This document shows positions 19,443 to 55,780 of a DNA stretch of 64,000 nt, in pieces. The stretch comes from Squalus acanthias (lineage: Eukaryota), in the NCBI GenBank assembly GCA_030390025.1, contig CM059430.1, positions 61,566,001-61,630,000 on the forward strand. Direction: 5' to 3'. The notes beneath the pieces were generated by a model, which was not told where the DNA came from, did no database searches, and saw nothing but the letters and a program-made list of their open reading frames with translations. The position numbers were made by a program, and so were the translations under genes. Numbering within the stretch: position 1 is the stretch's first letter; each line of letters begins with the position of its first letter.

Positions 19443-21260
19443 ATTAAGAGGCGAAAAATAGAGTTTGTGAGTAAACTTGCAAGGAACATAAAAGCAGACT
19501 GTAACAGCTTCTACAAGTATGTAAAAAGAAAAAGATTAGTGAAGACAAATGTAGGTCTCTTACAGTCAGAAATGGGAGAATTTTTAATGGGGAACAAGGA
19601 AATGGCAGTGCAATTAAACACATAACTTGGTTCTGTCTTCACGGAAGAGGACACAGATAAATTTCCATAAATACTAGGGAACCAAGGATCTAGTGAGAAG
19701 GAGGAATTAAAGGAAATTAGTATTAGTAAAAAAATAGTGCTGGAGAAATTAATGAGACTGAAAGCCGTTAAATTCCCTGGGCCTGATAATCTGCATCCCA
19801 GAGTACTAAAAGAGGCAGCCATGGAAATATTGGATGCACTGGTTGTCATCTTCCAAAATTCTGTACATTATGGAACAGTTCCTGCAGATTGGAGGGTGGC
19901 AAATGTAACCACACTATTTAAAAAAGGAGGGAGAGGAAACAACAGGGAACTACAGACCGGTTACCCTAACATCAGTAGTAGGGAAAATGCAAGAGTCTAT
20001 TATAAAGGATGTGATAACAGGACACGTAGAAAATATCAACTGGATTAGACAAAGTAAACATGGATTTATGAAAGCGAAATCGTGTTTGACAAACCTACTG
20101 GAGTTTTTGACGATGTAACTGGTAGAATAGATAAGGGAGAACCAGTGGATGTGGTGTATTTGCATTTCAGAAGGCCTTTGATAAAGTCCCACATAAGAGG
20201 TTAGTGTGCAAAGTTAAAGCACATGGGATTGTGGGTAATATACTGGCATGTATTGAAAATTGTTTAACAGACAGGGAACAGAGAGTAGGAATAAATGGTT
20301 CTTTTTCGGGGTTGCAGGCGTTGACAAGGGGTACTGCAGGGATCAGTGCTTGGGCCCCAGCTATTCACGATATATATTAATGATTTGGATGAGGGAACCA
20401 AATGTAATATTTCCAAGTTTGCTGACGACACGAAACTAGTTGGGATTGTGAGTTGTGAGGAGGGTGGAAAGAGGATTTAAGGCGTTTTAGACAAGTTGAG
20501 TGAATGGGGAAATACATGGCAGATGCAGTATAACGTCGATAAATGTGAAGTTATGGCAGAGTATTATTTAAATGGTGATAGATTGTGAAATGTTGATATA
20601 CAAAGGGACCTGGGTGTCCTTGTACACCTGTCACTGAAAGCTAACATGCAGGTGCAGCAAGCAGTTAGGGAGGCAAATGGTATGTTGGCCTTCATTGCAA
20701 GAGGATTTGAGTACAGGAGCAAGGATGTCTTACTACAGTTATGCAGGGCCTTGGTGAGATCACACCTGGAATACTGTGTGCAGTTTTGGCATCCTTATCT
20801 GAGAAATTATATATTTGCCATAGAGGAAGTGCAGCGAAGGTTCACCAGACTGATTCCTGGAATCGCAGGACTGTCATATGAGGAGAGATTGGGTCGACTA
20901 GGCCTGTATTCGACTAGATTAGAAGAATGAGAGGGGATCTCATTGAAACGTATAAAATTCTGACAGGGCTAGGCACACTGGATGCAGGGAGGATGTTTCC
21001 CCTGGCTGGGGGTTCTAGAACGAGGGGTCACAGTCTCAGGATGCGGGGTAGGATGTTTAGGACTGAGATGATGAGAAATTTCTTCACTCAGAGGTAGGTG
21101 AACCTGTGGAATTCTCTACCACAAAAGGCTGTGGAGGCCAAGTCACTGAATATATTTAAGAATGAGATAGATAGATTTCTAGATACAAAAGGATTCAAGG
21201 GGTATGGGGAGAGAGCGGGAATATGGTATTGAGATAGAGAATCAGCCATGATCATATTGA

Positions 21261-29732: not shown

Positions 29733-29876
29733 NNNNNNNNNNNNNNNNNNNNNNNNNNNNNNNNNNNNNNNNNNNNNNNNNNNNNNNNNNNNNNNNNNNN
29801 NNNNNNNNNNNNNNNNNNNNNNNNNNNNNNNNNNNNNNNNNNNNNNNNNNNNNNNNNNNNNNNNNNNNNNNNNNNN
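29733..29876. other. Assembly gap (144 N)
   Basis: Run of N preceded by a (GAAA)n-like repeat. Confidence 1.
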
Positions 29877-33084: not shown

Positions 33085-34510
33085 CCAATAAGAAAATAGA
33101 ATTAGATTGTACATAACTTCAGAAGGGAATCCTGTAATCCTGTAACTACAGGCCGGTCAGTTTAACATCAGTGGTGGGTAAAGTTTTAGAAACAATAATA
33201 AAGGAAAAAAATTATGAGCACTTGGAGAGGTTTAAGCTAATTAAGGAGAGCCAACACGGATTTGCAAAAGGCAGATCATGTTTGACTAATCTAATTGACA
33301 TTTTTTGATGAAGTAACAGGGAGGATCGTTGAAGGGAATGCAATGGATGCTGTCCACATGGATTTTAGGAAGGCGTTTGACTAAGTACCACATAGAAGGC
33401 TGGTTAACAAAATTGAGGCTCATGGAATAGATGGGTCACTGGCAGCTTGGATAAGGAATTGGCTTAAGACAGCAAACAGCGAGTTGTGGTAAATGGCTGT
33501 TTTCAGACTGGAGGATGGTAGACAGTAGTGCTCCCCAAGGGTCAGTGCTGGGGCCACTGCTTGTTTATATATATAAATGATCTGGATATTGGAATACCAA
33601 GTAGAATTTCTAAATTTGCCAATGACACCAGACTTGGGAGTGTTGCAAACAGAGATGATGATACCAACCGACTGCAACAGGATGTAGAAAGGCTAGCAGA
33701 ATGGGCAGACAAGTGGCAGATAGAATTTAATGCAGAGAAGTGTGAGGTGATGCATTTTGGCAGAAGGAACAGGGAGAGGCAATATACACTTAATGGCACA
33801 GTTTTAAAGAGTGTGCAGGGACAGAGCGACCCGGGAGTTAATGTGTATAGGTCCCTGAAGGTGGCAGGACATATTGAGAGAGTGGTTAGCAAAGCATATG
33901 GGATCTTGGGTTTCATAAATAGAGGTATTGAGTACAAAAGTAGAGAGGTTATGCTGAACTTTTATAAAGTGCTGGTTCGGCCACAACTGGCGTATTGCGT
34001 CCAGTTCTGGTCACCACACTTTAGGAAGGATGTGAAGGCCCTTGAGAGGGTACAGAGGAGATTTACCAGAATGGTTGCGGGGATGGGGAATCTTAGCTAC
34101 AAGGACAGGTTGGAGAAGCTGAATTTGTTTTCATTAGAGCAAAGGAGGTTGAGGGGTGATTTGATAGAGGTGTACAAGATTATGACGGGTTTGGATAGGC
34201 TAGACGGGGAAAGCTGTTCCCACTAGTTGATGGTACACGGACTAGGGGACACAGATTTAAGGTTTTGGGCAAGATATACAGTGGGGAAGGTGAATAAAAA
34301 CTTTTTTCGGACCTGTAACTCGCTGCCGACGGAAGTGGTGGAAGCAGACACACTCACTGTTTTAAAGGGAGGACTGGATAGGCACTTGAGGGAAACAAAC
34401 TTGCAGTGCTACGGGGATAGAACGGGGAATGGGACTGGCTGGATTGCTCTACAGAGAGCCGGCAAGGACTCGATGGGCCGAATGGCCTCCTTCTGTGCAG
34501 TTGTGACTCT
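33085..34510 (+). mobile_element. 5'-truncated CR1 (RT to tail) ending about 0.8 kb upstream of the IgSF gene
   Basis: ORF 33528-34226 (IYINDLD...KFANDT...RPQLAYCVQFWSP) and a tail at about 34470-34512. Confidence 0.9.
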
Positions 34511-35310: not shown

Positions 35311-35365
35311 ATGTCGGCGAGTATGCTTTTCTTGTGCCTGACTCTCCGGGGGATTATTTACACAG
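35311..35365 (+). CDS. Exon 1: signal peptide MSASMLFLCLTLRGIIYT
   Basis: ATG at 35311, hydrophobic leader, phase-1 donor ACAG|GTACC at 35365/35366, typical of an IgSF leader exon. Confidence 0.8.
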
Positions 35366-38300
35366 GTACCTCTTTATTCATTGTCCCAGCTACTTAAATT
35401 TATAAAATGCTTCCGAGGTAGTTTTCACATTAATTTAGTGAACTGTAATTCCTCTATCTAGATTATATTTCTCTCTTCCATCGCCATGACGTGTCTAATA
35501 CAATTAACCTGTACTTGACTATATTTTCTGACAGAAGCGGACCAGATTTCGTTCAGTGTAACTCAAGCGCCCAAACAAGCGACTGTATCCAGAGGGGGAA
35601 ACATCACCTTCCACTGCATATTCCCCATCTCCCAGGACCATTCCTGGGCAAGAGTGCATTGGTGGAAACAGGGTGAGAATGAATACCTGCGCACAAGCAC
35701 CGACAACAGAAAACGATTTGGTCTGACAAGTAAGGCGAGCGGGTTCTTTCAGTTGCTGAGCGCGACTTTCCAAGACTCTGGAGTTTATCAGTGCGCAGTG
35801 TCCCATCGGGGAATAATTCGAGGAAATGGAACCGGATCACATCTAATTGTGCATGGTAAGTGTGAAACACAGCGAGCGGCACAGTCGAATATATATCGAA
35901 CATATCAAACAGGGATGTTCTGTGATTGTTTTATTGCACCGCTTTTGGCAGTATACACATATGTATTGATACATTTCGCGATAAGTAAAATTGTATGTTC
36001 GTGTTCTCTGTGTAGAACTGCTTATTAGGCATTCAATATTACAGGCAGAGTATTGCAAAATTTATCAATATTATCCAATTAGACTATAACTCCAAAGACA
36101 ATTTACACACCTGCAGTCTGACAGCGGAAGTTCGGAACAAATTCCAAGCATATAACTGACTGAAAATCGTTTATATTAATGCATCTCTCCCAACATATAC
36201 ACGGCTCTCAGCCCATTTCTGATTTTCTGTCTGCCCTCATCGCTGTCTTTGCGGTTTAGCATTCCTGAAATTAATTCTCACATAATGTTAGCATCAGGGA
36301 TTATAAAGCTAGCGTGAAACTAACTGTTGATCAACGGCTTCACTCAACAAACTGGAGCTTGGAACACACAGCATTGTCACCTCATTAACCTCCAATAAAT
36401 AAAACAATACAGAGGAACTGTGTTACCGAACCCTCCTGAGGTTCAACCGAGCATAATTTCGTTCAACAATTGTCATGCTTCGGCTGTGGAATCTGTCCAA
36501 TACCGATTAAGGCCCTCATTTTGCCATCCACAATGTGCAGATTACTCGTCACTGTCTATCTGTTCCTAACACGGAGGGACTCAGCGCGCACACTTCCCTC
36601 GAGGTTTATTTACTTAATTCTTTCGATTATGAAAAGCAAACATTGATTAGCAAATCGTGGCGACTTGTCTGCTGAGTAACTCTAAGTCTTAGACTTGATA
36701 GCGCAGGTAAACTTGAACAGATGCGGGTCTCTATGAGAGATATGGATGAGTTGCGTGTAGTTGATGAGCGGAACATTAAAAGGACAGAGGCTGCGCTTTC
36801 GAATGGTGCTATAATAATAAAAAAGAAACATAGAAAATATGATAATGGCTGATCCTCTATCTGAATACCATATCCCCGCTCTCTCTAATGGACGGTACGT
36901 AAATCAGAATCATATTTAATCTCCCAATGGTGCCCAGTAACTCTACTTAATTCAATCTCTGTTCCACAGCGGCCCCGACCCCACTGAAGATTGTCTCCAC
37001 TGAAGGGATTCACCTGCTTCACTGACTCTTGTGTGTAAAACGGCTGCGTTTTATCCGGAGAATTTCACCCTCACTTGGTATAAAAATTGCGTCGAAATTG
37101 CATTAGGAATACATACCAGGAAAGTGCAGAACACGGAGGGACTGTATGAAGTTTCCAGCTCTTTGACTGAGACGAAGCCTGTCCCGAGTGACGCCAATTA
37201 TATATGTTTGGTTTCTCATGTCTCCCTCGAGACTCCAGCTGTTGTCACCCATACTCTTTCTAAATCTAACCAAGGTATGAGGCAAAAAGACCAAAATCGT
37301 AGAGAGATATATCGGACAGTTTGTACATATTAATAGTCATGAAGCTAGTCCACGGAAATCTTAAGGGAAATATCAACGAAAGCATTAAATTCGTGTTTTA
37401 ATGTATAATATAGTTCAACCTGACGAGTTGTAAAACCGGGTTATATCTCAGTTATATTATCAGTCAAAATATTTTTGGTTTCAAATTCCTGTATTTGATA
37501 TATACAATTATAAACTGAAGTTTAACTTTTCTATCCGATTATATTTCCGCATCTGCTTATTATTAATAATGTTTCAGTTTCTTTTATTTCAATTATAAGA
37601 TTGCTTTATTCTTTACCATTGCCTGCTCTCCTTGTATCAAGACTGTTACCAAAAGCTGCAGTCATGCACTTGGGCTTCTCCCAATGCAGTTCCTGATCCT
37701 GATCCCCCTATCGGCTAATTCTACTGCAGAGATCTGAAATTAACCCCCCAGCCAGCTTTTACCCCTCATCTGTTCCTGCCACAACGGGTTTAATTGGAAT
37801 CTGTCTCATAAATCTCATTGAAAGTGTGCCCGCAAACTGGCGACAGTACAGCCGGCACAACACATCTTTGTCCCGCAAGACAATAATCAATGAGCCATCG
37901 CCCGTTGATATCCTTTACTATTCAGTGACATTCTTACTTTAATAAACAGTTCGGATAATTGAAAGGGGATTTTTAACAGATTGCTGCAATCCGGAATTTC
38001 GTTTGGGCATCGAAGAAACGCTTGTGACAAAATTGCCTCCAATTTCATCAAATTATATGTTAATAAATAAGAAAGGGTAAGAAGAAGAACACATCTTTTG
38101 GTCATGGGAAATTGATCTCTCTCGTGTTCTACCTCTCCTAAAACAGTGTAGTGCGATGCGCAGATAGATCCAGAATGTCAGATCTATATACGAAGAAGTT
38201 ACTTCAAATATCTAACAGAAGTAACATTTTGTATTTAATCTTTCTTATTGCCGTTCTATACCGCGGAGTTACTGAAAGAAACATCATAGTTTAACCAATA

Positions 38301-40197
38301 AACTATCTTGAGGCCTATTTTTAACCAACGCCCTCCATAACTTAATGTTCCTATTAATCTTACAGATAGCGTCGATAAGTCACTTTACTTCTGGGCTTCT
38401 GGGTGTGTGGTGGGTGGATTGGCGTTTCTGGTGCTAATGATCTTCATTGGGACGCGGTGCCGACTGCTGAAGAATGAAGGTAAGATCAACTGTAAGCCCT
38501 TTATTTTATTACAAAACCTCCGGGTTAGTGACAGACTCCGGGTAACACGAGGGAAGCGGAACTCGATTAGGACTTAAAGTTGAAAACCGTGTTATCTGTT
38601 TCAGGAAGCGCCGATTGTTCCAAATGCATTTTAAAATGCAGAAATGCTTACAGAATCGTAATAAAAATTGAAATAAATATCTGGATATTTGCAACAAAAA
38701 TGCCCCCTTTGCAGCAGAATAAATGACATGTACCCTGACACACAATCACTTTCCAACCCATTCTGTTGTGGATGCGCAGCGAGTTTGAGTGAAGGAGTGC
38801 GAGGCTCCGGCCGGGGATTGGTTGCACACATAAGAACATAAGAAATCGGAGCAGGAGTAGGCCGTACTGCCCTCGAGCCTTCTCCGCCATGCAATAAGAC
38901 CTTGGCTGATCATCTACCTCAACGCCACTTTCCCGCCCTATCCCCATATCCCTTGATGCCCTTAGTGTCAAAAAAGATTCCCTTAGTTTCCGAGAAATAT
39001 CCAAAAAGCCACCATTGTTGATCGCTACCAGGGTTGGGATTTCAAACACTGTCGGCACAATCCGGAATTGGAAATCATGTTCTGCTTTGTTCTGACTCTA
39101 GAAATGTTTTTGCATTAAATTAAATTTCATTAATTTCCAGGTAAAGAAGAATGCGTAACCGGACCGAACTGCAGCCAAGAGCTGGTAAGTTAACTCATTC
39201 ATCCCGGCAGACGTTTGAAATGGCAAGAAAGATTGCAATAATGGAAAGATAATATCATAGTCATGTCAGAACAGTTTAATTCTATTTATTGAAAGTATTT
39301 ATCCGGTCTTAGTGAGTCATTCAAATCGTGGTTAGAAATGTACTTGACACCTGGTGCGTTGCTGGTAAAAAATGTTAAATGGCAGACAAGAAAACTGCGT
39401 GTTTCGTTGAAAATGCACCTAGGTAATAACTGTCTATAGATTCATCGATTGTTTGGATTTGAAAAAAAAACTTTACGTTCGAAAGATGCCGCTCATTTAA
39501 ACATTTCTGTAACACTGTGTTGTAGTGTGAACATTGACATGTTTAAATATTATAGTGATCACAGTTCCTTAATATTCACACCTATGTAAATATATCTGAA
39601 TTAGGGTTTGTGCACTTGATCTTTAGCCCAGTTCTACGTGTGCAATGTTTGATCAGCGGCATGTAAACTGGTGAAGGCAATGAACTAGCCACATAACCAA
39701 ATAATTTTCTTTCTGACCCATGCAGGGAGCAGCGGCTGAGACCGTGCATTATGCTGCATTAGATTTGAGCAGAGCCAGGAAAACTCCAAGACCTAAACGT
39801 GAAGAGCAGAGAACCGTGTCCGCTCAGGTAGGACTGAGTAAGAGATCAGAGAAAAATAGATCACCGGTGTTACATCAACATTCATGCGATAGCGGAGGGC
39901 ATTTGTTTGTGCTGACTTTGATCGTGTGTTGTATATAAGGCTATTTGTGTGACCTTCTGATGACTGCTTTGAACAGCAGTCCACAAAACAACCAATTAAC
40001 AATATTTCCAAACATTGCCTTCACAGACCGAACAAGGGACAGGCCGTGACAAGATGACGTACGCGACTATAGCATTGACTGGCTCAGAGAAAACGGGGAA
40101 ATGCAAAAATAACGAAAGGACAGAGTATGCCCAGCTGCGGACAAAAAAACAAAGAGGAGTAACAGAGGCTGTCTACACAGAAGTAAGAACAAATTAG
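35311..40197 (+). CDS. Multi-exon immunoglobulin-superfamily inhibitory receptor (leader-VJ-C1-TM-ITIM/ITSM tail; SIRP/NCR3-like, non-rearranging); C1 exon has a 1-nt frameshift as assembled
   Basis: Seven exons with canonical GT-AG junctions and matching phases: 35311-35365, 35535-35855, 36970-37274, 38366-38479, 39141-39184, 39726-39827, 40027-40197. The product is 370 aa if one base is restored in exon 3, or 268 aa if exon 3 is skipped. AATAAA at 40491-40496. Confidence 0.9.
35535..35855 (+). CDS. Exon 2: V-set Ig domain with built-in J-like G strand
   Basis: Acceptor ttttctgacag|, 321 nt, donor G|GTAAGT, phase 1-1. Translation EADQISFSVTQAPKQATVSRGGNITFHC...VHWWKQ...DSGVYQCAV...GNGTGSHLIVH shows the B-strand Cys, C-strand Trp, D-x-G-x-Y-x-C and a G-x-G-S-x-L-x-V motif. 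Confidence 0.95.
36970..37274 (+). CDS. Exon 3: C1-set Ig domain (frameshifted by -1 near 37001-37007)
   Basis: Acceptor ctctgttccacag|, donor G|GTATGA. Motifs LTLVCKTAAFYPENFTLTWYKN, NTEGLYEVSSSL and YICLVSHVSL are C1-set signatures. The exon is 305 nt (not a multiple of 3): the spliced-in frame reads AAPTPLKIVSTEGIHLLH* while the C1 frame resumes at DSPASLTLVC. Confidence 0.9.
38366..38479 (+). CDS. Exon 4: transmembrane exon DSVDKSLYFWASGCVVGGLAFLVLMIFIGTRCRLLKNE
   Basis: Acceptor tcttacag|, 114 nt, donor G|GTAAGA, phase 1-1. About 23 hydrophobic residues with no charged residue, followed by a basic stop-transfer segment. Confidence 0.9.
38828..38975 (-). mobile_element. CR1 tail fragment in intron 4 of the IgSF gene
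   Basis: cataagaacataagaaatcggagcaggagtaggcc... matches the other CR1 tails. Confidence 0.85.
39141..39184 (+). CDS. Exon 5: short cytoplasmic exon GKEECVTGPNCSQEL
   Basis: Acceptor taatttccag|, donor CTG|GTAAGT. At 44 nt it converts phase 1 to phase 0, exactly as needed to join exons 4 and 6. Confidence 0.8.
39726..39827 (+). CDS. Exon 6: cytoplasmic exon with ITIM VHYAAL
   Basis: Pyrimidine tract plus tgcag|, 102 nt, donor CAG|GTAGGA, phase 0-0. Reads GAAAETVHYAALDLSRARKTPRPKREEQRTVSAQ. Confidence 0.85.
40027..40197 (+). CDS. Exon 7: terminal cytoplasmic exon with MTYATI, TEYAQL and AVYTEV tyrosine motifs
   Basis: Acceptor ccttcacag|, phase 0, stop TAG at 40195-40197, polyA signal about 300 nt downstream. 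Confidence 0.85.
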   Translation, partial: TEQGTGRDKMTYATIALTGSEKTGKCKNNERTEYAQLRTKKQRGVTEAVYTEVRTN

Positions 40198-40490: not shown

Positions 40491-40496
40491 AATAAA
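40491..40496 (+). terminator. Polyadenylation signal AATAAA of the IgSF receptor gene
   Basis: Canonical AATAAA about 295 nt after the stop codon, followed by a T-rich stretch. Confidence 0.6.
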
Positions 40497-43419: not shown

Positions 43420-45330
43420 AGGCAGGGGGTTACTTAAAAATTAAATTAGGAGAGCGAAGAGGGGGCATGAAAAAACACTGGCGAGCAAAATAAAGGAAAA
43501 CCCTAAGGTGTTTTATAAGTATATTAAGGGCAAGAGGATAACCAGGGAAAGAGTAGGGCCCATTCGGGACCAAAGTAGCAATCTGTGTGTAGAGCCGGAA
43601 GATGTGGGTGAGGTTTTAAATGAATATTTTGCATCTGTGTTCACTATGGAGAAGGACGATGTAGCCATATAAATCAGGGAGGGGGATTGTGATATACTTG
43701 AACAAATTAATATTGAGAGGGAGGAGGTACTAGCGGTTTTAGCGGGCTTAAAAGTGGATAAATCCCCAGGCCCAGACGAGATGTATCCCAGGCTGCTGTG
43801 TGAGGCAAGGGAAGAGATTGCAGGGGCTCTGACACAACTTTTCTGAACCTCTCTGGCCACAGGGGAGGTGCCAGAGGACTGGAGGACAGCTAACGTAGTA
43901 CCATTTTTCAAGAGGGTAGTAGGGATAAACCAGGGAATTACAGGCCAGTGAGCCTAACATCAGTGGTAGGGAAATTATTGGAAAAAATTCTGAGGGACAG
44001 AATTAGTCTCCACTTGGAGAGGCAAGGATTAATCAAGGACAGTCAGCATGGCTTTGTCAGGGGGAGATCATGTCTGTCCAATTTGATTGAATTTTTCGAG
44101 GGGGTGACTTGGTGTGTGGATGAGGGTTGTGCAGTTGATGTGGTCTACATGGATTTCAGTAAGGTTTTTGACAAAGTCCCACATGGGAGACTGGTCAAGA
44201 AGGTAAGAGCCCATGGGATCCAGGGCAACTTGGCACATTGGATCCAAAATTGGCTTAGTGGCAGGAGGCAGAGGGTGATGGTCGAATGTTGTTTTGCTGA
44301 CTGGAAGCCTGTGTCCAGTGGTGTACCGCAGGGATCGGTGCTGGGTCCTTTGCTGTTTGTAGTGTACATTAATGATATAGATATGAATGTAGGAGGTATG
44401 ATCAGTAAGTTCGCAGATGACACGAAAATTGGTGGAGTGGTAAATAGCGAGGAGGGAAGTCTTAGGCTACAGGACGATAGAGACGGGTTGGCCAGATGAG
44501 CAGAACAGTGGCAAATGGAATTTAACCCTGAAAAGTGTGAGGTGATGCATTTTGGGAGGACTAACAAGGCAAGGGAATACACAATGAATGGTAGGATCCC
44601 AGGAAGGACAGAGGATCAGTGGCACCTTGGTGTGCATGTACATAGATCCCTGAAGGCAGCAGGACAGGTAGATAAGGTAGTTAAAAAGGCATATGGGATA
44701 CTTGCCTTCATTAGCCGAGGCATAGCATATAAGAGCAGGGAGGTTATGTTGGAGCTGTATAAAACGCTAGTTAGGCCACAGCTGGAATACTGTGTGCAGG
44801 TCTGGTCGCCACACTATCGGAAGGATGTGATTGCATTGGAGAGAGTGCAGAGGAGATTCACCAGGATGTTACCTGGGCTGCAGCGCTTCAGCTATGAAGA
44901 GAGACTGAACAGGCTGGAGTTGTTTTCCTTAGCACAGAGAAGGCTGAGGGGGGACCTGATTGAGGTGTACAAAATTATGAGGGGCATAGATAGGGTAGAT
45001 AGAAAGGAACTTTTCCCCTTAGTAGAGGGGTCAATAACCAGGGAGCATAGTTTCAAGGTAAGGGGCAGGAGGTTTAGAGGGGATTTGAGGAAAAACATTT
45101 TCACCCAGAGGGTGGTTGGAATCTGAAACTTACTGCCTGAAAAGGTGATAGAGGCAGGAACCCTCACAACATTCAAGAAGCATTTAGATGAGCACGTGAA
45201 ACGCCATAGCATACAAGGCTAAGGACCAAGTACTGGAAAATGGGATTAGAATAGACAGGGCTTGATGGCCGGCGCGGACACAATGGGCCGAAGTGCCTCT
45301 TTTGGTGCTGTATAACTCTATGACTCTATG
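43420..45330 (+). mobile_element. 5'-truncated CR1 (RT to tail)
   Basis: ORFs 43948-44499 and 44515-45126 carry RT motifs separated by single stops. Tail (ACTCTATG)n. Confidence 0.9.
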
Positions 45331-47112: not shown

Positions 47113-50100
47113 TAGAATCATAGAATGGTTACAGCACAGAAAGAGGCCATTCAGCCCGCCGAGCCCGTGCCAGCTCTGCAAGAGCACTTCAGCTTGTCCC
47201 CCTCCCCCGCCCTTTCTTCATAGCCCTGCAGATGTTTTTCGTTCTGGTACTTATCCAATTCCTTGTGAAAGTCACGATTGAGTTTGCCTCCATTAAACTT
47301 TCAGGCAGTGCATTCCAGATCCTAACCACTCGCTGTGTAAAAAAGTTTTTCCTCATGTCACCGTTGGTTCTTTTGCCAATCACCTTAAATCTGTGTCCTC
47401 TGGTTCTCGACTCTTCCACCAATGGAAACAGTTTCTCTCTCTCTACACTGTCTAGACCCCTCATGATTTTGAATACCTCTTTCAAATCTCCCCTCAACCT
47501 TTTCTGCTCTAAGGAGAACAACCCCAGCTTCTCTAGGCTATCCACGTAACTGAAGTCCCTCATCCCTGGATTCATTCTCGTAAATCTTTTCTGCACCCTC
47601 TTCACATCCTTCCTAAAGTGCAATGCCCAGAGTTGGACACAATACTCCAGTTGAGGCCGAACCAGTGTTTTATAAAGGTTCATCATAACTTCCTTGCTTT
47701 TGTACTCTATGCCTCTATTTATGAAGCCCAGTATCCGATATGCTTTTTAAACTTATTTCTCAACCTGCCCTGCCACAATCAACGATTTGTGCGCATATAC
47801 CCCCAGGTTTCTCTGTTAATGCACCCAGTTTAGGATTGTACCCTTTAGTTTATATTGCCTTTCCTCGTTCTTCCTACCAAAATGTATCACTTTGCTTTTT
47901 TCTGCATTAAATTGCATCTGCCATGTTACCGCCCATTCCTCCAGCCTGTCTATGTCTTCTTGAAGTCTCTCACTGTCCTCCTCACTGTTCACACTATAAT
48001 TTCAAGTTTTGTGTCATCTGCAAATTTTGAAATTCTTCCCTGTACTCCCAAGTCCAAGTCATTAATATATATCAAGAAAAGCAGTGGTCCTAGAACCGAC
48101 CCCTGGGGAACACCACTGTATACCGTCCTCCAGTCCGAAAAACAACCGTTCACCACTACTCTCTGTTTTCTGTCAATTAGCCAATTTTGTATCCATGCTG
48201 CCACAGTCACTTTTGTCCGTGGGCTTCAACTTTGCTGGCAAGCCTATTATGAGGTACTTTATCAAACGCCTTTTGGAAGTCCATGTACACCACCTCAACC
48301 GCATTGCCCTCATCAACCGCTCTGTTACCTCATCAAAAAACTCGATCAATTTAGTTGAACACGATTTGCCTTTAACCAATCCGTGCTGGCATTCCTTAAT
48401 TAATCCACAATTGTCCAAGTGACTGTTAACTTTGTCCCTGATTATGGTTTTTAAAAGCTTCCCCACCACCGTGGTTAAACTGACTGGCCTGTAATTGCTG
48501 GGATTATCCTTAGACCATATTTTGAACAAGGGTTTAACATTTGCAATTCTCCAGTCCTCTGGCACCACCACCATATCTAAGGAGGAATGGAAGATTATGG
48601 CCAGTACCTCTGCGATTTCCTCCTTAATATCCCTTAGCATCCGAGGATGCATTCCCACCGGCCCTGGTGACTTATCAATTTTTAGTACAGACAGCCTTTC
48701 TAGTACCGCCACTTTATCATTTTTTATCTCATCTGGTATCTCCACGACCTCCTATTTCACTATGACTTGGGCAGCATCTTCTTCCTTGGTGAAGACAGCT
48801 GCAAAGTACTCATTTAATACCTCAGCCATGCCCCCTGCCTCCATGCGTACGGCCCCTTTTTGGTTCCTAATTTGTCCCACCACTCCTCTTTCTACCCGTT
48901 TATTATTGATATGCCCATAGAAAACTTTTGATTCCCTTTTATGTTAGCTGCCAATCTATTCTCATACTCTCTCTTTTATTCTCAACCTGACATCTGTCAT
49001 ATGCGTGCTTCTTCTGCTTCATCTTACTCTCTATCTCCTTCATCATCCAGGGAGCTCTGGCTTTAGTTGCCATACCTTTCCCCCTCTTGGGAATGTACCT
49101 CGACTGTGCTCGAACCATCTCCTCTTTAAAGGCAGCCCATTTTTCGATTACAGTTTTGCCTGCCAATCTTTGATTCCAATTTACCTGGGCCAGATCAAAT
49201 CTCAACCCACTGAAATTAGCATTGCTCCAATTAAGTGCTTTTAATCTAGATTGCTCGCTGTCGTTTTCTATAGCTAATCTAAACCTTATGATACTATGAT
49301 CACTGTTCCCTAAATTTTCCCCAACTGATACTTGCTCCACTCCCCAGAACCAGATCCAGGAATGCCTCCTTCCTCGTTGGGCCAGAAACGTACTGATCAA
49401 GAAAGTTCTCTTGAACACACTTCAGAAATTCTTCCCCATCTCTGCCCTTTACACTATTACTATCCCAGTTTATATTAGGATAATTGAAGTCCCCAACAAC
49501 TTGGGAGCTTGGTAAGTGTGGGAGTTTTAAGGGTTAATCTCTTTTAAAATCTAGTGTTAATTGCTAGTAGCTCTTAAGTAAGATCAACTGTTTAAGTTAA
49601 ATTTTAAACTTTAAATTTTTAAGTTTCTTTCAGGCTTAAGCAGTGAAAACTTGAAGCTCTCCTACTGGAGAGCTGCTGTAGTCAGTTAAATAGCTAGCTA
49701 GATTAAACTGGTTCCTGAAACAATACCAGAGCAGTGGTGACTCACTTGAGTTACAAAAAGTATAAATACAGGGGCTTATGAGTGCAACCGGCACTAGGTG
49801 CAGTGGGCACAGAGTGAACAACTTGGGAATTTGGTAAGTGTGGGAGTTCGGAGTAGTGGGGGGAGGAGGTGCTGCTTTGCCTTGCTTTTCCTAACTTCTC
49901 CCGCAGAGCGGCGGCGGACCTGAGCGGGAGCAGCCCGAGGCCTTAGAGCGGGGATAAAAGCAGCAACAGACCTGCATCAACAAGAGAAAACGGCAGTGTA
50001 ACGTTACAGGTAAGGCAGGTAATTGATTGGTCGTGACTGTGGGCTAAGTTTTAAGTTAGCATATAGGATATAACTATATTTTTAAACCTAAACATAAATT

Positions 50101-53100
50101 AATTAATTTAATAAACTAAACAAAGTAAATAATTTGCTTAACACTAAACTAAATAATAAAATAAATAAAAGAAATGGAGAACAGGAGATGTGTTGCTGCT
50201 GCAATATGTTGTAGCTTGTGGACATTTTTGTCCATGGTGACTACATCTACGGTAAGTGTCTGTGGCTCGAGGAAATTCGGCTCCGAGTTGAGGAGCTGCA
50301 GACATTGCGAGACATCAGGGAGGGAGAAAGTTTATTGGACCTTTTGCTGCAGGAGGCAGCCAGACCCCTTAGATTAAATACTTTAGAATTGACACGTGGT
50401 CAGGGACAGGAGGGTGTCACTGCGAGTGAGGCAGGTACGGGGATCCAGCAGGGATTATTGCAGGAGCCTCAGTCCCTGCACTTGTCCAATAGATTCGAGG
50501 TTCTTGCAAACCTTGTGGACACGTTTGGGACTGCAGGGAGGATGAGCAAACTGATCACGGCACTGTGGTACAGCAAACCTTTCAAGTGGGGGGAGTAAAA
50601 AGGAAGGTGGTTGTAGTAGGCAACAGTATAGTCAGGGGGATAGACACTGTTCTCTGCAGCCAGGAGCATGAGTCCCGAAGGCTATATTGCCTATCCGGTG
50701 CCAGGGTGAAGGACATCTCCTCCGGGCTGGAGATTAACTTGGAGTGGGAGGGAGAGGACCTAGTTGTCGTGGTCCACGTAGGTACCAACGACATAGGTAG
50801 GATTAAGAAAAAGTTGCTGCTGAGAGAGTTTGAACAGCTAGGGACTAAATTGAAAAGCAGAACCACAAAAGTAATAATCTCTGGATTATTACCTGAGCCA
50901 CGAGCAAATTGGAATAGGGTTAATAGGATCAGGGAGATGGATGCATGGCTCAAAGATTGGTGTGGATATAGTGGGTTTCGATTCGTGGTGCACTGACACC
51001 AGTAATGGGGAAAGAGAGAGCTGTTTTGTTGGGACGGACTACACCTGAACCATGCTGGGACCAGAGTTCTAACAAATCGAATAACTATGGAGGTAGATAG
51101 GCCTTTAAACTAAATAAGGGTGGGGGGGAGAGTCCCAGTGGAGAGAAACCTAGAATGTTAAAGAAAAATACAAGGAAGCAGTGCAGGAAAGTGATTGGAG
51201 AATGGATAACCAGATTGTGTCTGGAAGGGATAGAGCGTACAAACAAAAGAGTGCTCTTACAAATAGGCTCCGGGTAAGAAAAAATGGTAATAAGACAAAT
51301 AGGGCCATAGTATAAAAAAATGTTAAGATGTCTAAAAATGTTAAAAAGACAAATCTAAAGGCACTGTATCTGAATGCACGAAGCATTCAGAATAAGGTAG
51401 ATGAAAATAACAGCGCAAATAGATGTAAACAGATGCGATATAATTGCGATTACGGAGACATGGCTGCAGGGTGACCAAGGCTGGGAGTTGAATATCCAAG
51501 GATATTCGATATTTAGGAAAGACAGGCAAAAAGGAAAAGCAGGTGAGGTGGCATTGTTAGTAAAGGATGAAATCAGAGCAATAGTGAGAAAGGATATTGG
51601 CACAGAAAATCAAGAATCAGTCTGGGTGCAGCTAAGAAGCACCAAAGGGCAGAAAACATTGGTGGGAGTTGTCTATAGGCCTCCAAATAGAAGTGATAAT
51701 GTAGGGGACTGCATCAAACAGGAAATTAGAGATGCATGTAACAAGGGTACTTCCGTAATCATGGGTGACTCTAATCTACATATGGACTGGCCAAACCAAA
51801 TGAGCAATAATACTGTGGAGGATGAATTCCTGGAGTGTGTACAAGATGTTTTTTTTAGAGCAGTACGTTGAGGAGCCAACTAGGGAACAGGCTATCCGAG
51901 ATTGGGTATTGTGCAATGATAAGGGGTTAATTAATAATCTTGTTGTGCGGGATCCTTTAGGGAAGACTGACCATAACATGATAGAATTCTTCATTAAGAT
52001 GGAACATGAAGTAGTCCAATCCGAAACTAGGGTCCTAAATCTATCCAAAGGCAACTACATAGTTATTAGGAGTGAGTTGGCTATGATAGATTGAGGAACC
52101 TCATTACAAGGCATGACGGTGGATAGGCAATGGCTAACATTTAAGGAACGAATGCATGAATTGCAACAGTTATACATTCCTTTCTGGCGCCAAATCACAA
52201 AAGGAAAAGCGCATACAACCATGGCTAACAAAAGAAATTAAGGATAGTATTAGATTCAAAGAGGAGTCATATAAACTTGCCAGAAAAAGTAGCAAGCCGG
52301 AGGATTGGGAGCAGTTTAGAATTTAGCAAAAAAGGACCAAGAGATTGATTAAGAGGGGAAAATAGAGTATGAGAGTAAACTTGCAAGGAACATAAAAGCT
52401 GACTGTAAAAGCTTCTACAAGTATGTAAAAAGAAAAAGATTAGTGAAGAGAAATGTAGGTCCCATACTGTCAGAAATGGGAGAATTTATAATGCGGAACA
52501 AGGAAACGGCAGAGCAATTAAACAGATACTTTGGTTCTGTCTTCATGGAAGAGGACACAAATAACTTCCCAGAAATGCTACGGAACCAAGGGTCTAGTGA
52601 GAAGGAGGAATTAAAGGAAATTAGTATTAGTAAAAAAATAGTGCTGGAGAAATTAATGGGACGGAAAGCCGATAAATCCCCAGGGCCTGATAATCTGCAT
52701 CCCAGAGTACTAAAAGAGGTAGCCATGGAAATAGTGGATGCTTTGGTTGTCATCTCCCAAAATTCTATAGATTTTGGAACAGTTCCTGCAGATTGGAGGG
52801 TCGCAAATGTAACCCCACTATTTAAAAAAGAAGGGAGAGAGAAAACAGGGAACTACAGACCGGTTAGCCTAACATCATTAGTAGGGAAATTGCTAGAGTC
52901 GATTATAAAGGATGTGATAACAGTACACTTAGAAAATATCAATGGGATTAGACAAAGTCAACATGGATTTATGAAAGGGAAATCGTGATTGGCAAACCTA
53001 CTGGAGTTTCTTGAGGATGTAACTGGTAGAATAGATAGGGAGAACCAGTGGATGTGTTGTTTTTGGATTTTCAGATGGCCTTTGATAAAGTCTCACATAA

Positions 53101-55780
53101 GAGGTTAGTGTGCAAAATTAAAGCACTTGGGGTTGGGGGTAATATACTGGCATGGATTGAAAATTGGTTAACAGTCAGGAAACAGAGAGTAGGAATAAAT
53201 GGGTCCTTTTCGGGGTGGCAGGCGGTGACTAGTGGGGTACCGCAGTGATCAGGGCTTGGGCCCCAGCTATTCACAATATATATCAGTGATTTGAATAAGG
53301 AACCAAATGTAATATTTCCAAGTTTGCTGACGACACGAAACTAGTTGGGATTGTGAGTTGTGAGGAGGATGCAAAGAGGCTTCAAGGCGATTTAGACAAG
53401 TTGAGTGAGTGGGCAAATGCATGGCAGATGCAGTATAACGTGGATAAATGTGAAGTTATCCACTTCGGTAGGAAAACCAGAAAGGCAGAGTATTATTTAA
53501 ATGGTGATAGATTGGGAAATGTTGATGTACAAAGGGACCTGGGTGTCCTTGTACACCAATCACTGAAAGTATACATGCAGGTGTAGCAAGCAGTTAGGAA
53601 GGCAAATGGCATGTTTGTCTTCATTGCAAGAGGATTTGAGTACAGGAGCAATGATGTCTTACGAGCAAGGATGTCTTACTACAGTTATACAGGCCCTTGG
53701 TGAGACCACACCTGTAGTACTGTGTGCAGTTTTGGGCTCCTTACGTAAGAAAGGATATATTTGCCATAGAGGGAGTGCAGCGAAGGTTATCCAGACTGAT
53801 TTCTGGGATGGCAGGACGGTCGTATGAGGAGAGATTGGGTCGACTAGGCCTGTATTCAATAGAGTTCAGAAGAATGAGGGGATCTCATTGAAACGTTTAA
53901 AATTCTGACAGGGCTAGACAGACTGGATGCAGGGAGGATGTTTCCCCTGGCTGAGGGGGGTGGGGGCGGTCTAGAACGAGGGGCCACAGTCTCAGGATAC
54001 GGGATAGATCATTTAGGACTGAGATGAGGAGAAATTTCTTCACTCAGAGGTTGGTGAACTTATGGAATTCTCTACCAGAGTCGGCTGTGGAGGCCAAGTC
54101 ACTGAATATATTTAAGAATGAGATAGATAGATTTCCAGACACAAAAGGCATCAAGGGGCATTGGGAGAGAGCGGAAATATGGTATCGAGATAGAGGATCA
54201 GCCATGATCATATTGAAAGGCGGAGCAGGCTCGAATTGCCTAATCCTGCTACTATTTTTCTATGTCTATTTTTCTATTACTACTCTTTGGTTCTTGCACC
54301 TCTCTGTAATTTCCCTGCAAATTATGCTGCTCTATACTTTCCCATTAGCTGGTGGCCTGTAAAATACATCAAGTAGTGCAATGGCACCGCTATAACTTCT
54401 TAACTCTAACCAAATAGAACCCGTCCTTGACCCCTCCAGGACGTTCTCTTTCTCCAGTACTGTAACATTCTCCTCAACTAATACTGCCACCCACCTCCTT
54501 TCTTTCATTCCCTTTCTTTCCTGAACACCTTATATCCAGGAATATTTAAAAACCAATCCTGCCCTTTTTTGAGCCAGGTCTCCATAATCGCTATGACATC
54601 ATATTCCCATGTGGCTATTTGCGCCTGCAGCTCACCAACTTTATTTACCATGCTTCATGCGTTTAACCACATGCACTATAAAGCTGCCTTAGATCTTCTT
54701 GTATGCTCTCCTGTTCTGACCCCACCTAATACAATACTCTTTCTTACTCTAGTGCCATCTGTTCTCCCCATCCTATGTGCACTTTGTTTCTTCTTTCTAA
54801 TGCTACATCCTGGTCCCCAGCCCCCTGCCAAATTAGTTTTAACTCTCCCCAACAGCGTTAGCCCCCACCCCGCGAGGCCATTGGTTCCGGCTCTATTGAG
54901 GTGCAAACCCGCCCGGCCTGTACAGGTCGCACCTCCCCCAGAACCAGTCCCAATCTCTCAGTAATCTGAAGCCCTCCCTCCTGCACCATCTCTCCAGCCA
55001 TGCATTCATCTGCTCTATCCTCCTATTTCTATACTCACAAGCTCGTGACACAGGGAGTAATCCAGAGATTACTACTTCTGAGGTCCTGATCTTTAATCTC
55101 TTTCCTAGCTCCCTTAAATCTACCTGCAGGACCTTCACCCTTTTTTTCTACCTATGTCCACGACCTCTAACTGTTCACCCTCCCCCCTCAGAATGTTCTG
55201 CAGCCGCTCGGTGACATCCTTGACCTGGTACCAGGGAGGCAACATACAATCCTGGAATCAAGTCTGTGGCTGCAGAAACGCCTGTCTGTTCCCCTAACTA
55301 TCGAATACCCTACCACTATTGCCTTCCCAATGTTCCTCTTCCCCTACAGCTGAGCCACCCATGGTGCCGTGGATTTTGCTCTGGCTGTACTCCCCAGAGG
55401 AACCATCACGCTCACCAGGAAAGCGAGATGCACTCATGGGATGCCTGAGCTACCTGCCTGGTCCTCCTTGTCTGTTTGATGGTCACCAGTCCCTATCTGC
55501 CTGCACACTCTTATGCTGCGGGGTGACCACCTCCTCAAACTTGCTATCCACGTAGCTCTCAGCCTCAACGATGCACCGCAGTGACACCAGCTGCAGCTCA
55601 AGCTCCAAAACACAGAGCTTGAACTCCTCGAGCTGACGACACTTCCTGCACATGTGATTGTCCAGGACACGGGAAGCATCCTGGATTTCCTTGCATGACA
55701 CAGGATGTGTATTCCACGGGACTGAGGTGCCCTGCCATGCCTCTATTTATTCAACTTTTAACTAACTTAGAGAAATAAAC
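47113..55780 (-). mobile_element. Near-full-length decayed CR1, host of a + strand CR1
   Basis: Tail at 47113, RT at 47189-48745, APE to 49494, resuming at about 54270 (gaagtcccc|attactactct). ORF1 at 54840-55738. Confidence 0.85.
49495..54270 (+). mobile_element. Full-length decayed CR1 (5' UTR, ORF1, ORF2, tail)
   Basis: 5' UTR at 49495-50173, ORF1 fragments at 50174-51110 (VVVVHVGTNDIG), ORF2 fragments at 51350-54190 with stops and frameshifts, tail to about 54268. Confidence 0.9.

What the first reader, a model, noticed from the sequence alone, without database searches (positions are those of the whole stretch)
35311..40197. Non-rearranging VJ-C1 inhibitory receptor with antigen-receptor-like architecture in a cartilaginous fish
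Seen in sequence: seven phase-compatible exons give leader + V domain + C1 domain + uncharged TM + tyrosine-motif tail. The J-like G strand (GNGTGSHLIVH) is encoded contiguously in the V exon with no recombination signal. Established: C1-set domains are largely confined to Ig, TCR, MHC, beta2-microglobulin, tapasin, SIRP and B7-H6-type proteins. Germline-joined VJ domains occur in NKp30/NCR3, SIRP and teleost NITRs, and germline VJ-C1 genes have been proposed to resemble the pre-RAG antigen-receptor ancestor. Inference: this is a member of a shark SIRP-like or NK/myeloid inhibitory receptor family. One V plus one C1 differs from mammalian SIRP (V-C1-C1) and NKp30 (V only). The ORF track misses most of the gene because the exons are short.
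Basis: partly seen in the sequence, partly recalled or inferred. Interest (0 to 1): 0.85.

Follow-up and report, generated by a model that had tools for sequence, protein, structure and literature searches.

The report
Frameshifted shark SIRP-like receptor gene
A cartilaginous-fish gene for an inhibitory immune receptor with one V and one C1 domain is really there and belongs to a large SIRP-like family already auto-annotated in other sharks, rays and chimaeras, but this copy has a one-base break in its C1 exon.

Summary
The seven exons exist at the stated coordinates, all with AG/GT borders, and they match intact chondrichthyan proteins exon by exon and in order. The V exon is V-set and carries a contiguous J-like strand with no RSS heptamer. 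The C1 exon is C1-set. The claim "phase-compatible" fails for exon 3. It is 305 nt where a multiple of three is needed. The frame entering from V stops at TGA 37023-37025, and the C1 body lies one frame over. Everything else looks healthy: 12 of 12 invariant and 30 of 30 near-invariant family positions are kept. The gene belongs to a chondrichthyan V-C1-TM family that RefSeq names SIRP-alpha-like, SIRP-beta-like or tapasin-related. Some members have long tyrosine-motif tails and others have an Arg in the TM segment. A family profile ranks human SIRP-alpha third and SIRP-gamma fifth among PDB sequences. No RNA evidence was obtained. Unchecked first-reader notes of the scan report the same family many times elsewhere in this genome. 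I found no paper describing the family.

The parts
35311..35365 (+). Exon 1: start codon and split leader (MSASMLFLCLTLRGIIYT), ending in phase 1
   Evidence: Read. It is 17 of 18 identical to the leader of Heptranchias P0162. The donor is acacag|gtacct.
35535..35855 (+). Exon 2: V-set domain with a germline-joined J-like G strand (GTGSHLIV fits G-x-G-T/S-x-L-x-V); 321 nt, phase 1 to 1
   Evidence: Pfam V-set E 4.3e-9. It is 75-76% identical over 106 aa to P0161 and P0162 and hits P0001 at E 1.4e-42. No CACAGTG lies in or next to it.
36970..37274 (+). Exon 3: C1-set domain, 305 nt, with an internal one-base frame break
   Evidence: Pfam C1-set E 6.4e-10 on 37004-37273. The A strand APTPLKIVS is in the entering frame and the body is in the next frame. 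The body is 79% identical to P0161 over 90 aa.
37002..37010 (+). Site of the frame break (GAA GGG | AT..., a run of three G)
   Evidence: Homologues align to the G codon at 37005-37007 in one frame and to the D codon at 37007-37009 in the other. Stops lie at 37001 in the body frame and at 37023 in the entering frame.
38366..38479 (+). Exon 4: stalk, uncharged TM segment (LYFWASGCVVGGLAFLVLMIFIG) and stop-transfer TRCRLLKNE; 114 nt, phase 1 to 1
   Evidence: Translation. It is 56-70% identical to P0162, P0161 and P0166.
39141..39184 (+). Exon 5: short cytoplasmic exon (KEECVTGPNCSQEL), phase 1 to 0
   Evidence: It is 11 of 14 identical to P0161 residues 265-278.
39726..39827 (+). Exon 6: cytoplasmic exon with the ITIM VHYAAL. 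The family's conserved TVYAQ tyrosine is Ser here (TVSAQ)
   Evidence: It is 76% identical to P0162 residues 284-317.
40027..40197 (+). Exon 7: cytoplasmic exon with MTYATI, TEYAQL and AVYTEV, then TAG
   Evidence: It is 76% identical to the tail of P0166. The stop codon was read.
40491..40496 (+). Possible polyadenylation signal AATAAA, about 295 nt after the stop codon
   Evidence: Read only. It was not tested.

Best explanation
This is the inhibitory-type member of a local cluster of chondrichthyan SIRP-like paired receptors. The gene encodes a split leader, a germline-joined VJ-type V domain, one C1-set domain, an uncharged TM segment and a tail with several tyrosine motifs.

How an intact protein would work (all inferred):
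- The V domain binds a still unknown ligand, and the C1 domain acts as a stalk or dimer interface.
- Src-family kinases phosphorylate the ITIM and ITSM-like tyrosines.
- The phosphotyrosines recruit SH2 phosphatases of the SHP-1/SHP-2 type and damp the cell.
- Neighbouring family members with an Arg in the TM segment would give the opposite, adaptor-coupled signal.

In this assembly the C1 exon lacks one base at a GGG run. Translation from the ATG therefore ends 18 codons into exon 3, and the full receptor cannot be made.

My estimates for the frame break:
- About 55%: a real, very recent lesion (young pseudogene or null allele).
- About 35%: an assembly indel.
- The rest: a real lesion bypassed by splicing.
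For: - Exons, borders and domains.
- Colinear match of the exons to intact proteins P0162, P0161, P0166 and P0001.
- Family membership: the window keeps 12/12 invariant, 30/30 near-invariant and 79/83 of the columns that are at least 70% conserved in alignment A1. The 23 members keep 62-81 of those 83.
- The V exon sits in a 15-row elasmobranch clade with SH-aLRT 98.
- SIRP likeness: RefSeq names. Profile A1 against PDB gives SIRP-alpha E 5.5e-30 in two stretches, 62.7 bits over V+C1 and 45.2 bits for D3, and SIRP-gamma E 1.7e-26. Atlas score 0.97 to SIRP-alpha clusters for P0162.
- Paired design: TM segments with Arg in P0005, P0152, P0170, P0038 and P0164, against long tails with ITIM-type motifs in P0162, P0166, P0173 and others.
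- SIRP signalling logic: passages of the SIRP review PMC12975943.
- Frame break.
Against: - No transcript evidence. None of the 3 listed runs holds the stretch, and no contig crossed a predicted intron.
- Searched singly, neither the V exon nor the C1 body lists a SIRP chain among the 60 best PDB hits shown.
- The Atlas puts the V exon next to generic V-set fragments.
- The top PDB score of the profile is UrIg2, not SIRP.
- No bony-vertebrate SIRP sequence could be brought into a tree, so orthology is untested.
- Real lesion versus assembly error could not be tested, because the one read-laying run gave no usable cover at 37005.
- Two changes at conserved places (Gly to Cys in WYKNG, Tyr to Ser in TVYAQ) hint at relaxed constraint but are also compatible with a working gene.
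- Ligand, phosphatase binding and cell type are all inferred.
Confidence: 0.75

Rival explanations
1. The frame break is an assembly or consensus indel at the short G run. The gene is intact and encodes a working V-C1-TM-ITIM inhibitory receptor.
For: - Both sides of the break still encode family-typical residues: APTPLKIVS before it and DSPASLTLVCK after it.
- All 42 invariant or near-invariant positions are kept.
- All splice sites are canonical.
- There is only one lesion in about 1.1 kb of coding sequence.
Against: - A run of three to four G is short for a homopolymer error.
- No near-identical protein turned up; the best matches are 75-79% identical. The window's genome may simply not be in that collection.
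- A family-conserved tyrosine is Ser here.
- Young pseudogenes are common in multigene immune-receptor clusters (general knowledge).
Confidence: 0.35
2. The damaged C1 exon is bypassed by splicing. Skipping exon 3 (35855 joined to 38366) keeps the frame and gives a V-TM-ITIM receptor. Alternatively a cryptic donor at 35860 joined to the acceptor at 37006 restores the C1 body without its A strand.
For: - Exons 2 and 4 are both phase 1.
- Family members with V spliced straight to the TM exist: Callorhinchus P0013, whose V is identical to that of the C1-bearing model P0188, and Narcine P0008.
- A passage of the SIRP review says some SIRP splice variants contain only D1.
- One search found only one acceptor (37006, phase 2) that reads the C1 body open, and a phase-2 GT at 35860.
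Against: - No junction-spanning contig was seen.
- The normal exon 3 acceptor has a strong pyrimidine tract, so inclusion, and then nonsense-mediated decay, is expected.
- The cryptic sites are weak. A C1 domain without its A strand may not fold.
Confidence: 0.12
3. The family is a relic of the antigen-receptor lineage (UrIg/UrIg2, IgL or TCR-like chain) and not SIRP kin. The SIRP-like tail would then be convergent.
For: - The C1 body's best PDB hit is UrIg2 V-C1-C2-C3 (E 1e-13).
- The family profile's best total score is also UrIg2 (E 4.9e-32).
- The 50 Foldseek rows shown for the model of P0162 are, by their titles, antibody Fab entries or complexes that hold a Fab (E about 1e-16).
- The Atlas's first named cluster for the V exon is 'putative Antigen receptor (Fragment)'.
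- Unchecked scan notes place other family members inside IgL arrays.
Against: - UrIg2's score is the sum of three C-domain stretches (47.8, 27.5 and 35.9 bits). SIRP-alpha's single V+C1 stretch scores 62.7 bits and its D3 45.2 bits.
- UrIg2 has 9-11 C domains (section 7 of PMC12227049), and that paper has no occurrence of 'ITIM' or 'inhibitory'.
- The whole-protein Atlas search favours SIRP-alpha clusters.
Confidence: 0.12
4. It is the shark orthologue of NKp30 (NCR3).
For: It has a non-rearranging VJ-type V domain with a G-x-G-T/S-x-L-x-V strand.
Against: - It has a C1 exon and an uncharged TM with its own tyrosine tail.
- No NKp30 chain is among the 60 best PDB hits listed for the V exon. 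That NKp30 structures are in the PDB is recalled, not checked.
- An unchecked scan note places NKp30-like single-V genes on another piece of this genome.
Confidence: 0.02

Closest known systems
Mammalian signal-regulatory proteins (SIRP-alpha, -beta, -gamma)
   Same: - V-set domain with a J-like G strand followed by C1-set.
- Uncharged TM plus a tail with several tyrosines of ITIM type.
- Kin with a basic TM residue, i.e. a paired-receptor design (review passages).
- The family profile ranks SIRP-alpha third and SIRP-gamma fifth in PDB.
- RefSeq auto-names the homologues SIRP-alpha-like or SIRP-beta-like.
   Different: - One C1 domain instead of two.
- Single exons do not single out SIRP.
- The ligand is unknown.
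- Orthology and synteny are untested.
- This copy has a frame break.
UrIg and UrIg2 (elasmobranch non-rearranging antigen-receptor-like genes; PMC12227049 abstract, sections 7 and 12 part 1; passages of PMC10751288)
   Same: - Germline-joined VJ exon with a split leader, followed by C1-type domains, in cartilaginous fish.
- UrIg2 is the best PDB hit of the C1 body and of the family profile by total score.
   Different: - UrIg2 has 9-11 C domains and forms disulphide-linked homodimers.
- That paper has no occurrence of 'ITIM' or 'inhibitory'.
- The gene here has one C1 and its own tyrosine-motif tail.
Immunoglobulin light chains and TCR chains
   Same: A two-domain V + C1 ectodomain. The model of homologue P0162 has confident V and C1 domains (10-residue pLDDT blocks of 73-96 over residues 21-220). 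The 50 Foldseek rows shown are, by their titles, antibody Fab entries or complexes that hold a Fab.
   Different: - There is no RSS and no separate J segment.
- The TM is uncharged and the chain carries its own signalling tail, rather than relying on CD3 or CD79 partners.
NKp30 / NCR3
   Same: A non-rearranging VJ-type V domain on an innate receptor.
   Different: NKp30 has no C1 domain. That it signals through a charged TM is recalled, not checked. It is not among the listed PDB hits.
Teleost NITRs and chicken PRARPs (both recalled; no paper was read here)
   Same: Germline-joined VJ-type V domains on ITIM-bearing or charged-TM receptors in multigene clusters.
   Different: As recalled, NITRs have an I-type second domain or none, and PRARPs have only the V domain. 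Neither has a C1-set domain. Not tested here.

Membership tests
Chondrichthyan V-C1-TM family (RefSeq 'SIRP-alpha-like / SIRP-beta-like / tapasin-related-like') | Same exon order and content: leader, VJ, C1, TM, cytoplasmic tyrosine exons | tested here: met
   tblastn of P0162, P0161, P0166 and P0001 finds the exons in order. Exon-wise blastp agrees.
Chondrichthyan V-C1-TM family (RefSeq 'SIRP-alpha-like / SIRP-beta-like / tapasin-related-like') | Family-invariant residues | tested here: met
   12/12 invariant, 30/30 near-invariant and 79/83 columns at 70% or more are kept.
Chondrichthyan V-C1-TM family (RefSeq 'SIRP-alpha-like / SIRP-beta-like / tapasin-related-like') | Placement inside the family in domain trees | tested here: met
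   The V exon sits in a 15-row elasmobranch clade with SH-aLRT 98. The C1 body lies beside P0161, P0001 and P0165 without a starred branch (quick trees; only labelled rows were used).
Chondrichthyan V-C1-TM family (RefSeq 'SIRP-alpha-like / SIRP-beta-like / tapasin-related-like') | Intact reading frame | tested here: not met
   Exon 3 is 305 nt and the entering frame meets TGA at 37023.
SIRP family | N-terminal V-set domain with a J-like strand | tested here: met
SIRP family | [quoted passage not shown] | tested here: not met
   There is one C1 exon and no second C1-like exon in the window. The close homologues also have one.
SIRP family | ITIM tail that recruits SHP-1/SHP-2 | tested here: inconclusive
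   The motifs VHYAAL and TEYAQL are present, plus two near-consensus tyrosines. Phosphatase binding cannot be tested with these tools.
SIRP family | Paired activating members with a basic TM residue | tested here: met
   Family members P0005, P0152, P0170, P0038 and P0164 have Arg in the predicted TM and short tails. Neighbouring Arg-TM genes are known only from unchecked notes.
SIRP family | Sequence kinship closer to SIRP than to other IgSF | tested here: inconclusive
   The profile ranks SIRP-alpha third and SIRP-gamma fifth of 11,110 matches, and the Atlas gives 0.97. Single exons show no SIRP in the 60 listed, and no tree with SIRP sequences could be built.
SIRP family | CD47 binding and conserved synteny | not testable with these tools
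The window holds no flanking non-family gene.
UrIg / UrIg2 | VJ exon followed by several C domains (UrIg2: 9-11) | tested here: not met
   There is one C1 exon. The UrIg2 architecture is from PMC12227049 section 7.
Rearranging antigen receptors (Ig, TCR) | V exon ending in an RSS, with separate J segments | tested here: not met
   The J-like strand is contiguous in the V exon, and no CACAGTG lies in or beside it.
NKp30 / NCR3 | Single V domain, no C domain | tested here: not met
   A C1-set exon is present.

The most novel reading that the evidence does not exclude
The chondrichthyan V-C1-TM family may be the cartilaginous-fish counterpart of SIRP that keeps the simplest 'one V, one C1, own signalling tail' layout. 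That would make it a living, non-rearranging, paired activating/inhibitory relative of the chain type from which antigen receptors are thought to derive. It is expanded into a family spread over many megabases and, as far as my searches reach, has not been described in print. On this reading the copy studied here is a freshly disabled member showing birth-and-death turnover.
Probability: 0.3. Interest if true: 0.65.

Novelty: new member of a known kind. Interest (0 to 1): 0.4.

Why it matters
C1-set domains outside Ig, TCR and MHC are rare. SIRP has been discussed as a link to antigen-receptor origins, and UrIg and UrIg2 are now put forward as non-rearranging relics in sharks (PMC12227049). 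A large chondrichthyan family with a VJ-type V, a single C1 and a SIRP-like paired activating/inhibitory design would add a third kind of non-rearranging V-C1 gene in the oldest jawed vertebrates. It would also give a testable system: ligand, phosphatase recruitment, cell type.

This one locus adds little. It is one more family member, and as assembled it is broken. Its main value is as a dated example of gene turnover in the cluster, or as a flag for an assembly indel.

Tried and rejected
- **Chance ORFs:** rejected. Pfam and homologue E-values are strong, and the exons match intact proteins in order.
- **A second paralogue in the window:** none. In tblastn of the exon peptides only the self-hits were significant; the next best had E 0.05 or worse.
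- **Canonical rescue of the frame:** I listed all AG acceptors in 36900-37060 and GT donors in 35800-35900. The strong phase-1 donor at 35856 has no acceptor that reads the C1 body open. Only the cryptic pair 35860/37006 does.
- **The search for homologous proteins with the V exon alone:** 1 candidate, none scored, because of the tool's length window.
- **RNA evidence:**
  - 3 runs were listed and none holds the stretch.
  - Laid contigs covered mainly two high-copy intronic repeats. There was slight depth on 35592-35762 in 2 of 3 runs and a trace on 36960-37301.
  - No joint lay at any predicted intron. One joint (36859 to 38927) runs from the first repeat to the second and has extra letters between its sides. 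I take it for a repeat chimera.
- **Foldseek on the P0162 model:** swamped by antibody Fab entries, so it cannot tell SIRP from light chains.
- **Synteny and MHC linkage:** The rest of the window holds LINE-type ORFs: 7 of the 9 ORFs scanned have RT and/or endonuclease domains. The 8 MHC notes shown, of 98, are all on other pieces.
- **Literature:** nine searches found no paper describing a chondrichthyan SIRP-like V-C1 family.
  - 'PRARP' returned 106 papers; all 15 listed use the term in other senses.
  - The UrIg paper (PMC10530332) and Ohta et al. 2019 were not held.
  - Subscription journals and supplements may describe the family. I did not open supplements. The supplementary tables and figures of PMC12227049 and the supplements of PMC10751288 could list such genes.
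- **NKp30 orthology and a rearranging receptor:** both rejected on architecture.

Full report
**What is in the sequence.** On the + strand, from the ATG at 35311 to the TAG at 40195-40197, there are seven exons: 35311-35365, 35535-35855, 36970-37274, 38366-38479, 39141-39184, 39726-39827 and 40027-40197. Every internal border is AG|exon|GT behind a pyrimidine tract.
- Exon 1 is a split leader.
- Exon 2 translates to a 106-residue V domain. Pfam gives V-set at E 4.3e-9 and Ig_3 at E 3e-9, both above their curated cut-offs. Its last strand, GNGTGSHLIVH, contains GTGSHLIV, which fits the J pattern G-x-G-T/S-x-L-x-V. It is encoded without interruption after YQCAVS.
- None of the 13 CACAGTG heptamers in the window lies in or next to this exon.
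- The body of exon 3 is C1-set (E 6.4e-10, 39.7 bits against a cut-off of 21). The next family, C2-set_3, stays below its cut-off.
- Exon 4 has an uncharged TM segment.
- Exons 6 and 7 carry VHYAAL (ITIM consensus), MTYATI, TEYAQL (ITSM-like) and AVYTEV.

**The flaw in the observation.** Exon 3 is 305 nt, but a phase-1 to phase-1 exon needs a multiple of three.
- Read from the V donor it gives APTPLKIVSTEGIHLLH and then TGA at 37023-37025.
- The C1 body, DSPASLTLVCKTAAFYPENF..., is in the next frame, which is closed upstream by TGA at 37001-37003.
- Intact homologues align with the first frame up to the Gly codon at 37005-37007 and with the second frame from the Asp codon at 37007-37009. One base is therefore missing in or beside a GGG run.
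- I listed all AG and GT sites around the intron. The strong phase-1 donor at 35856 has no acceptor that reads the C1 body open. Only a weak phase-2 GT at 35860 paired with the AG before 37006 would do so, at the cost of the A strand.
- Skipping exon 3 keeps the frame, because exons 2 and 4 are both phase 1.
- A separate first-reader note on this window (s1-889570) had already flagged the frameshift. I confirm it.

**Relatives.** I made no joined cDNA or protein.
- The V exon alone finds 215 proteins at E 0.001 or better among 1.84 billion representatives, 94 of them at 1e-10 or better. The best are 250-400-residue proteins of cartilaginous fishes.
- Look-ups and two further searches give their RefSeq or UniRef names: 'tyrosine-protein phosphatase non-receptor type substrate 1-like' (that is, SIRP-alpha-like), 'signal-regulatory protein beta-1-like', 'tapasin-related protein-like', and odd ones such as 'CD276 homolog' or 'MHC class II beta-like'.
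- The species include Mustelus, two Scyliorhinus, Heterodontus, Heptranchias, Chiloscyllium, Stegostoma, Hypanus, Hemitrygon, Mobula, Pristis, Narcine and Callorhinchus.
- In one search, 23 of 33 hits were this family (22 carry chondrichthyan names, one is unnamed) and 10 were weak matches to multi-V reptile proteins. In one search all 42 hits were chondrichthyan. That search scored only the 8000 candidates sharing most words, so it says nothing about bony-vertebrate kin.
- The closest proteins are Heterodontus P0161 (V 75%, C1 79%) and Heptranchias P0162 (V 76%, C1 75%, leader 17 of 18).
- Quick maximum-likelihood trees put the window's V in a 15-row elasmobranch clade (SH-aLRT 98) and its C1 beside the same proteins.
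- Against a 23-member alignment the window keeps 12/12 invariant, 30/30 near-invariant and 79/83 columns that are at least 70% conserved. The members themselves keep 62-81.
- Two departures stand out. Cys replaces the usual Gly in WYKNG. Ser replaces the tyrosine of the TVYAQ motif, which 11 of the 12 aligned tails that cover it keep.

**Comparison with known families.**
- A profile of the 23 members against 177,635 distinct PDB sequences gives UrIg2 V-C1-C2-C3 first (E 4.9e-32; stretches of 47.8, 27.5 and 35.9 bits). An IgA1 entry is second.
- Human SIRP-alpha ectodomain is third (E 5.5e-30). One stretch of 62.7 bits covers the whole V+C1 unit and one of 45.2 bits covers D3. SIRP-gamma is fifth.
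- Per-stretch scores were printed only for the top four, so I claim no more than that ranking.
- The Atlas puts the intact homologue P0162 next to 'SIRP-alpha' clusters (0.97, 215 of 256 features).
- Against this, the window's V exon and C1 body searched singly list antibody, TCR, PD-L1, UrIg2 and IgH chains but no SIRP among the 60 shown. The Atlas neighbours of the V exon are generic V-set fragments.
- An AlphaFold model of P0162 has confident V and C1 domains, a TM helix at 233-269 and a disordered tail. Foldseek returns antibody Fab entries at about 1e-16 with poor global superposition. The ectodomain is therefore light-chain-like in fold.
- The family works like SIRP and is plausibly SIRP kin, but it fails the V-C1-C1 criterion, and orthology is untested.
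- It is not UrIg or UrIg2, which have many C domains. It is not NKp30, which has no C1, and it is not a rearranging receptor.

**How it most likely works.** What is shown: the domain order, the uncharged TM, the motifs, and the existence in the family of both long-tailed members with ITIM-type motifs and short-tailed members with Arg in the TM. What is inferred from the SIRP paradigm (passages of PMC12975943):
- ligand binding by the V domain;
- tyrosine phosphorylation and recruitment of SHP-type phosphatases;
- inhibition of the cell, opposed by Arg-TM kin that pair with ITAM adaptors.

Unchecked scan notes report Arg-TM V-C1 genes 29 kb before and 8 kb after the window, and many SIRP-like genes from 0.18 to 13.9 Mb further along the same piece.

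**Status of this copy.** As assembled, translation ends 18 codons into exon 3, and the message would be a candidate for nonsense-mediated decay.
- The otherwise perfect conservation means the lesion is either very young or not real.
- I put a real lesion (young pseudogene or null allele) at about 55% and an assembly indel at about 35%. The remainder is a real lesion bypassed by splicing.
- A V-TM-ITIM product has precedent in Callorhinchus P0013, which has the same V as the C1-bearing model P0188, and in Narcine P0008.

**Expression.** None of the 3 listed runs holds the stretch.
- Their contigs lie mostly on two high-copy intronic repeats, in the depth bins 36789-36959 and 38670-39011.
- There is slight depth on part of the V exon in 2 of 3 runs.
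- There is no joint at a predicted intron.
- This neither supports nor refutes transcription.

**Novelty.** The architecture and the family are already in public protein sets under automatic names. The scan's first readers noted it many times in this genome: 92 notes hold the words searched and 17 hold 'SIRP'.
- Nine literature searches found no paper that describes the family.
[quoted passage not shown] It has no occurrence of 'SIRP', 'ITIM' or 'inhibitory'.
- Papers in subscription journals and supplements that I could not see may cover the family.
- This locus is a new, and probably broken, member of a known kind.

**Limits.**
- No SIRP, TCR, IgL or NCR3 sequences could be brought into a tree.
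- The window's own reads were not available to check the G run.

Noticed in passing
window 16132-19080 (- strand): A 983-aa open reading frame with endonuclease (Exo_endo_phos E 2.3e-12) and reverse transcriptase (RVT_1 E 7.6e-31) domains: an apparently full-length LINE ORF2. Six further RT or endonuclease ORF fragments lie at 10771-11592, 14994-15743, 33528-34223, 43948-44496, 48176-48745 and 52443-52985.
   Followed up: partly
window 36789-36959 and 38670-39011 (depth bins in introns 2 and 4): Two high-copy repeats. Contigs of all three runs pile up here, with summed depth in the thousands to tens of thousands, while the exons have almost none. One joint between them (36859 to 38927, with 11 extra letters) looks like a repeat chimera, not splicing.
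   Followed up: no
window 39820-39822: The tyrosine of the family's TVYAQ tail motif is Ser here (TVSAQ). 11 of the 12 aligned tails that cover it keep Tyr and one has Phe.
   Followed up: partly
window 37085-37087: Cys replaces the Gly of the WYKNG turn of the C1 domain, adding an unpaired cysteine. Gly is the residue in at least 70% of the family rows.
   Followed up: partly
stored proteins P0188 and P0013 (Callorhinchus milii): The RefSeq model P0188 (489 aa) reads V-C1-V-partial C1-tail without a TM segment. It looks like two neighbouring genes merged. P0013 uses the identical V spliced straight to a TM exon.
   Followed up: no
window 29733-29876: A run of 144 N (assembly gap or masked stretch).
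   Followed up: no
window 20382-20443 and 53293-53348: Two near-identical reverse-strand stretches gave the same weak tblastn hits, probably copies of one repeat family.
   Followed up: no
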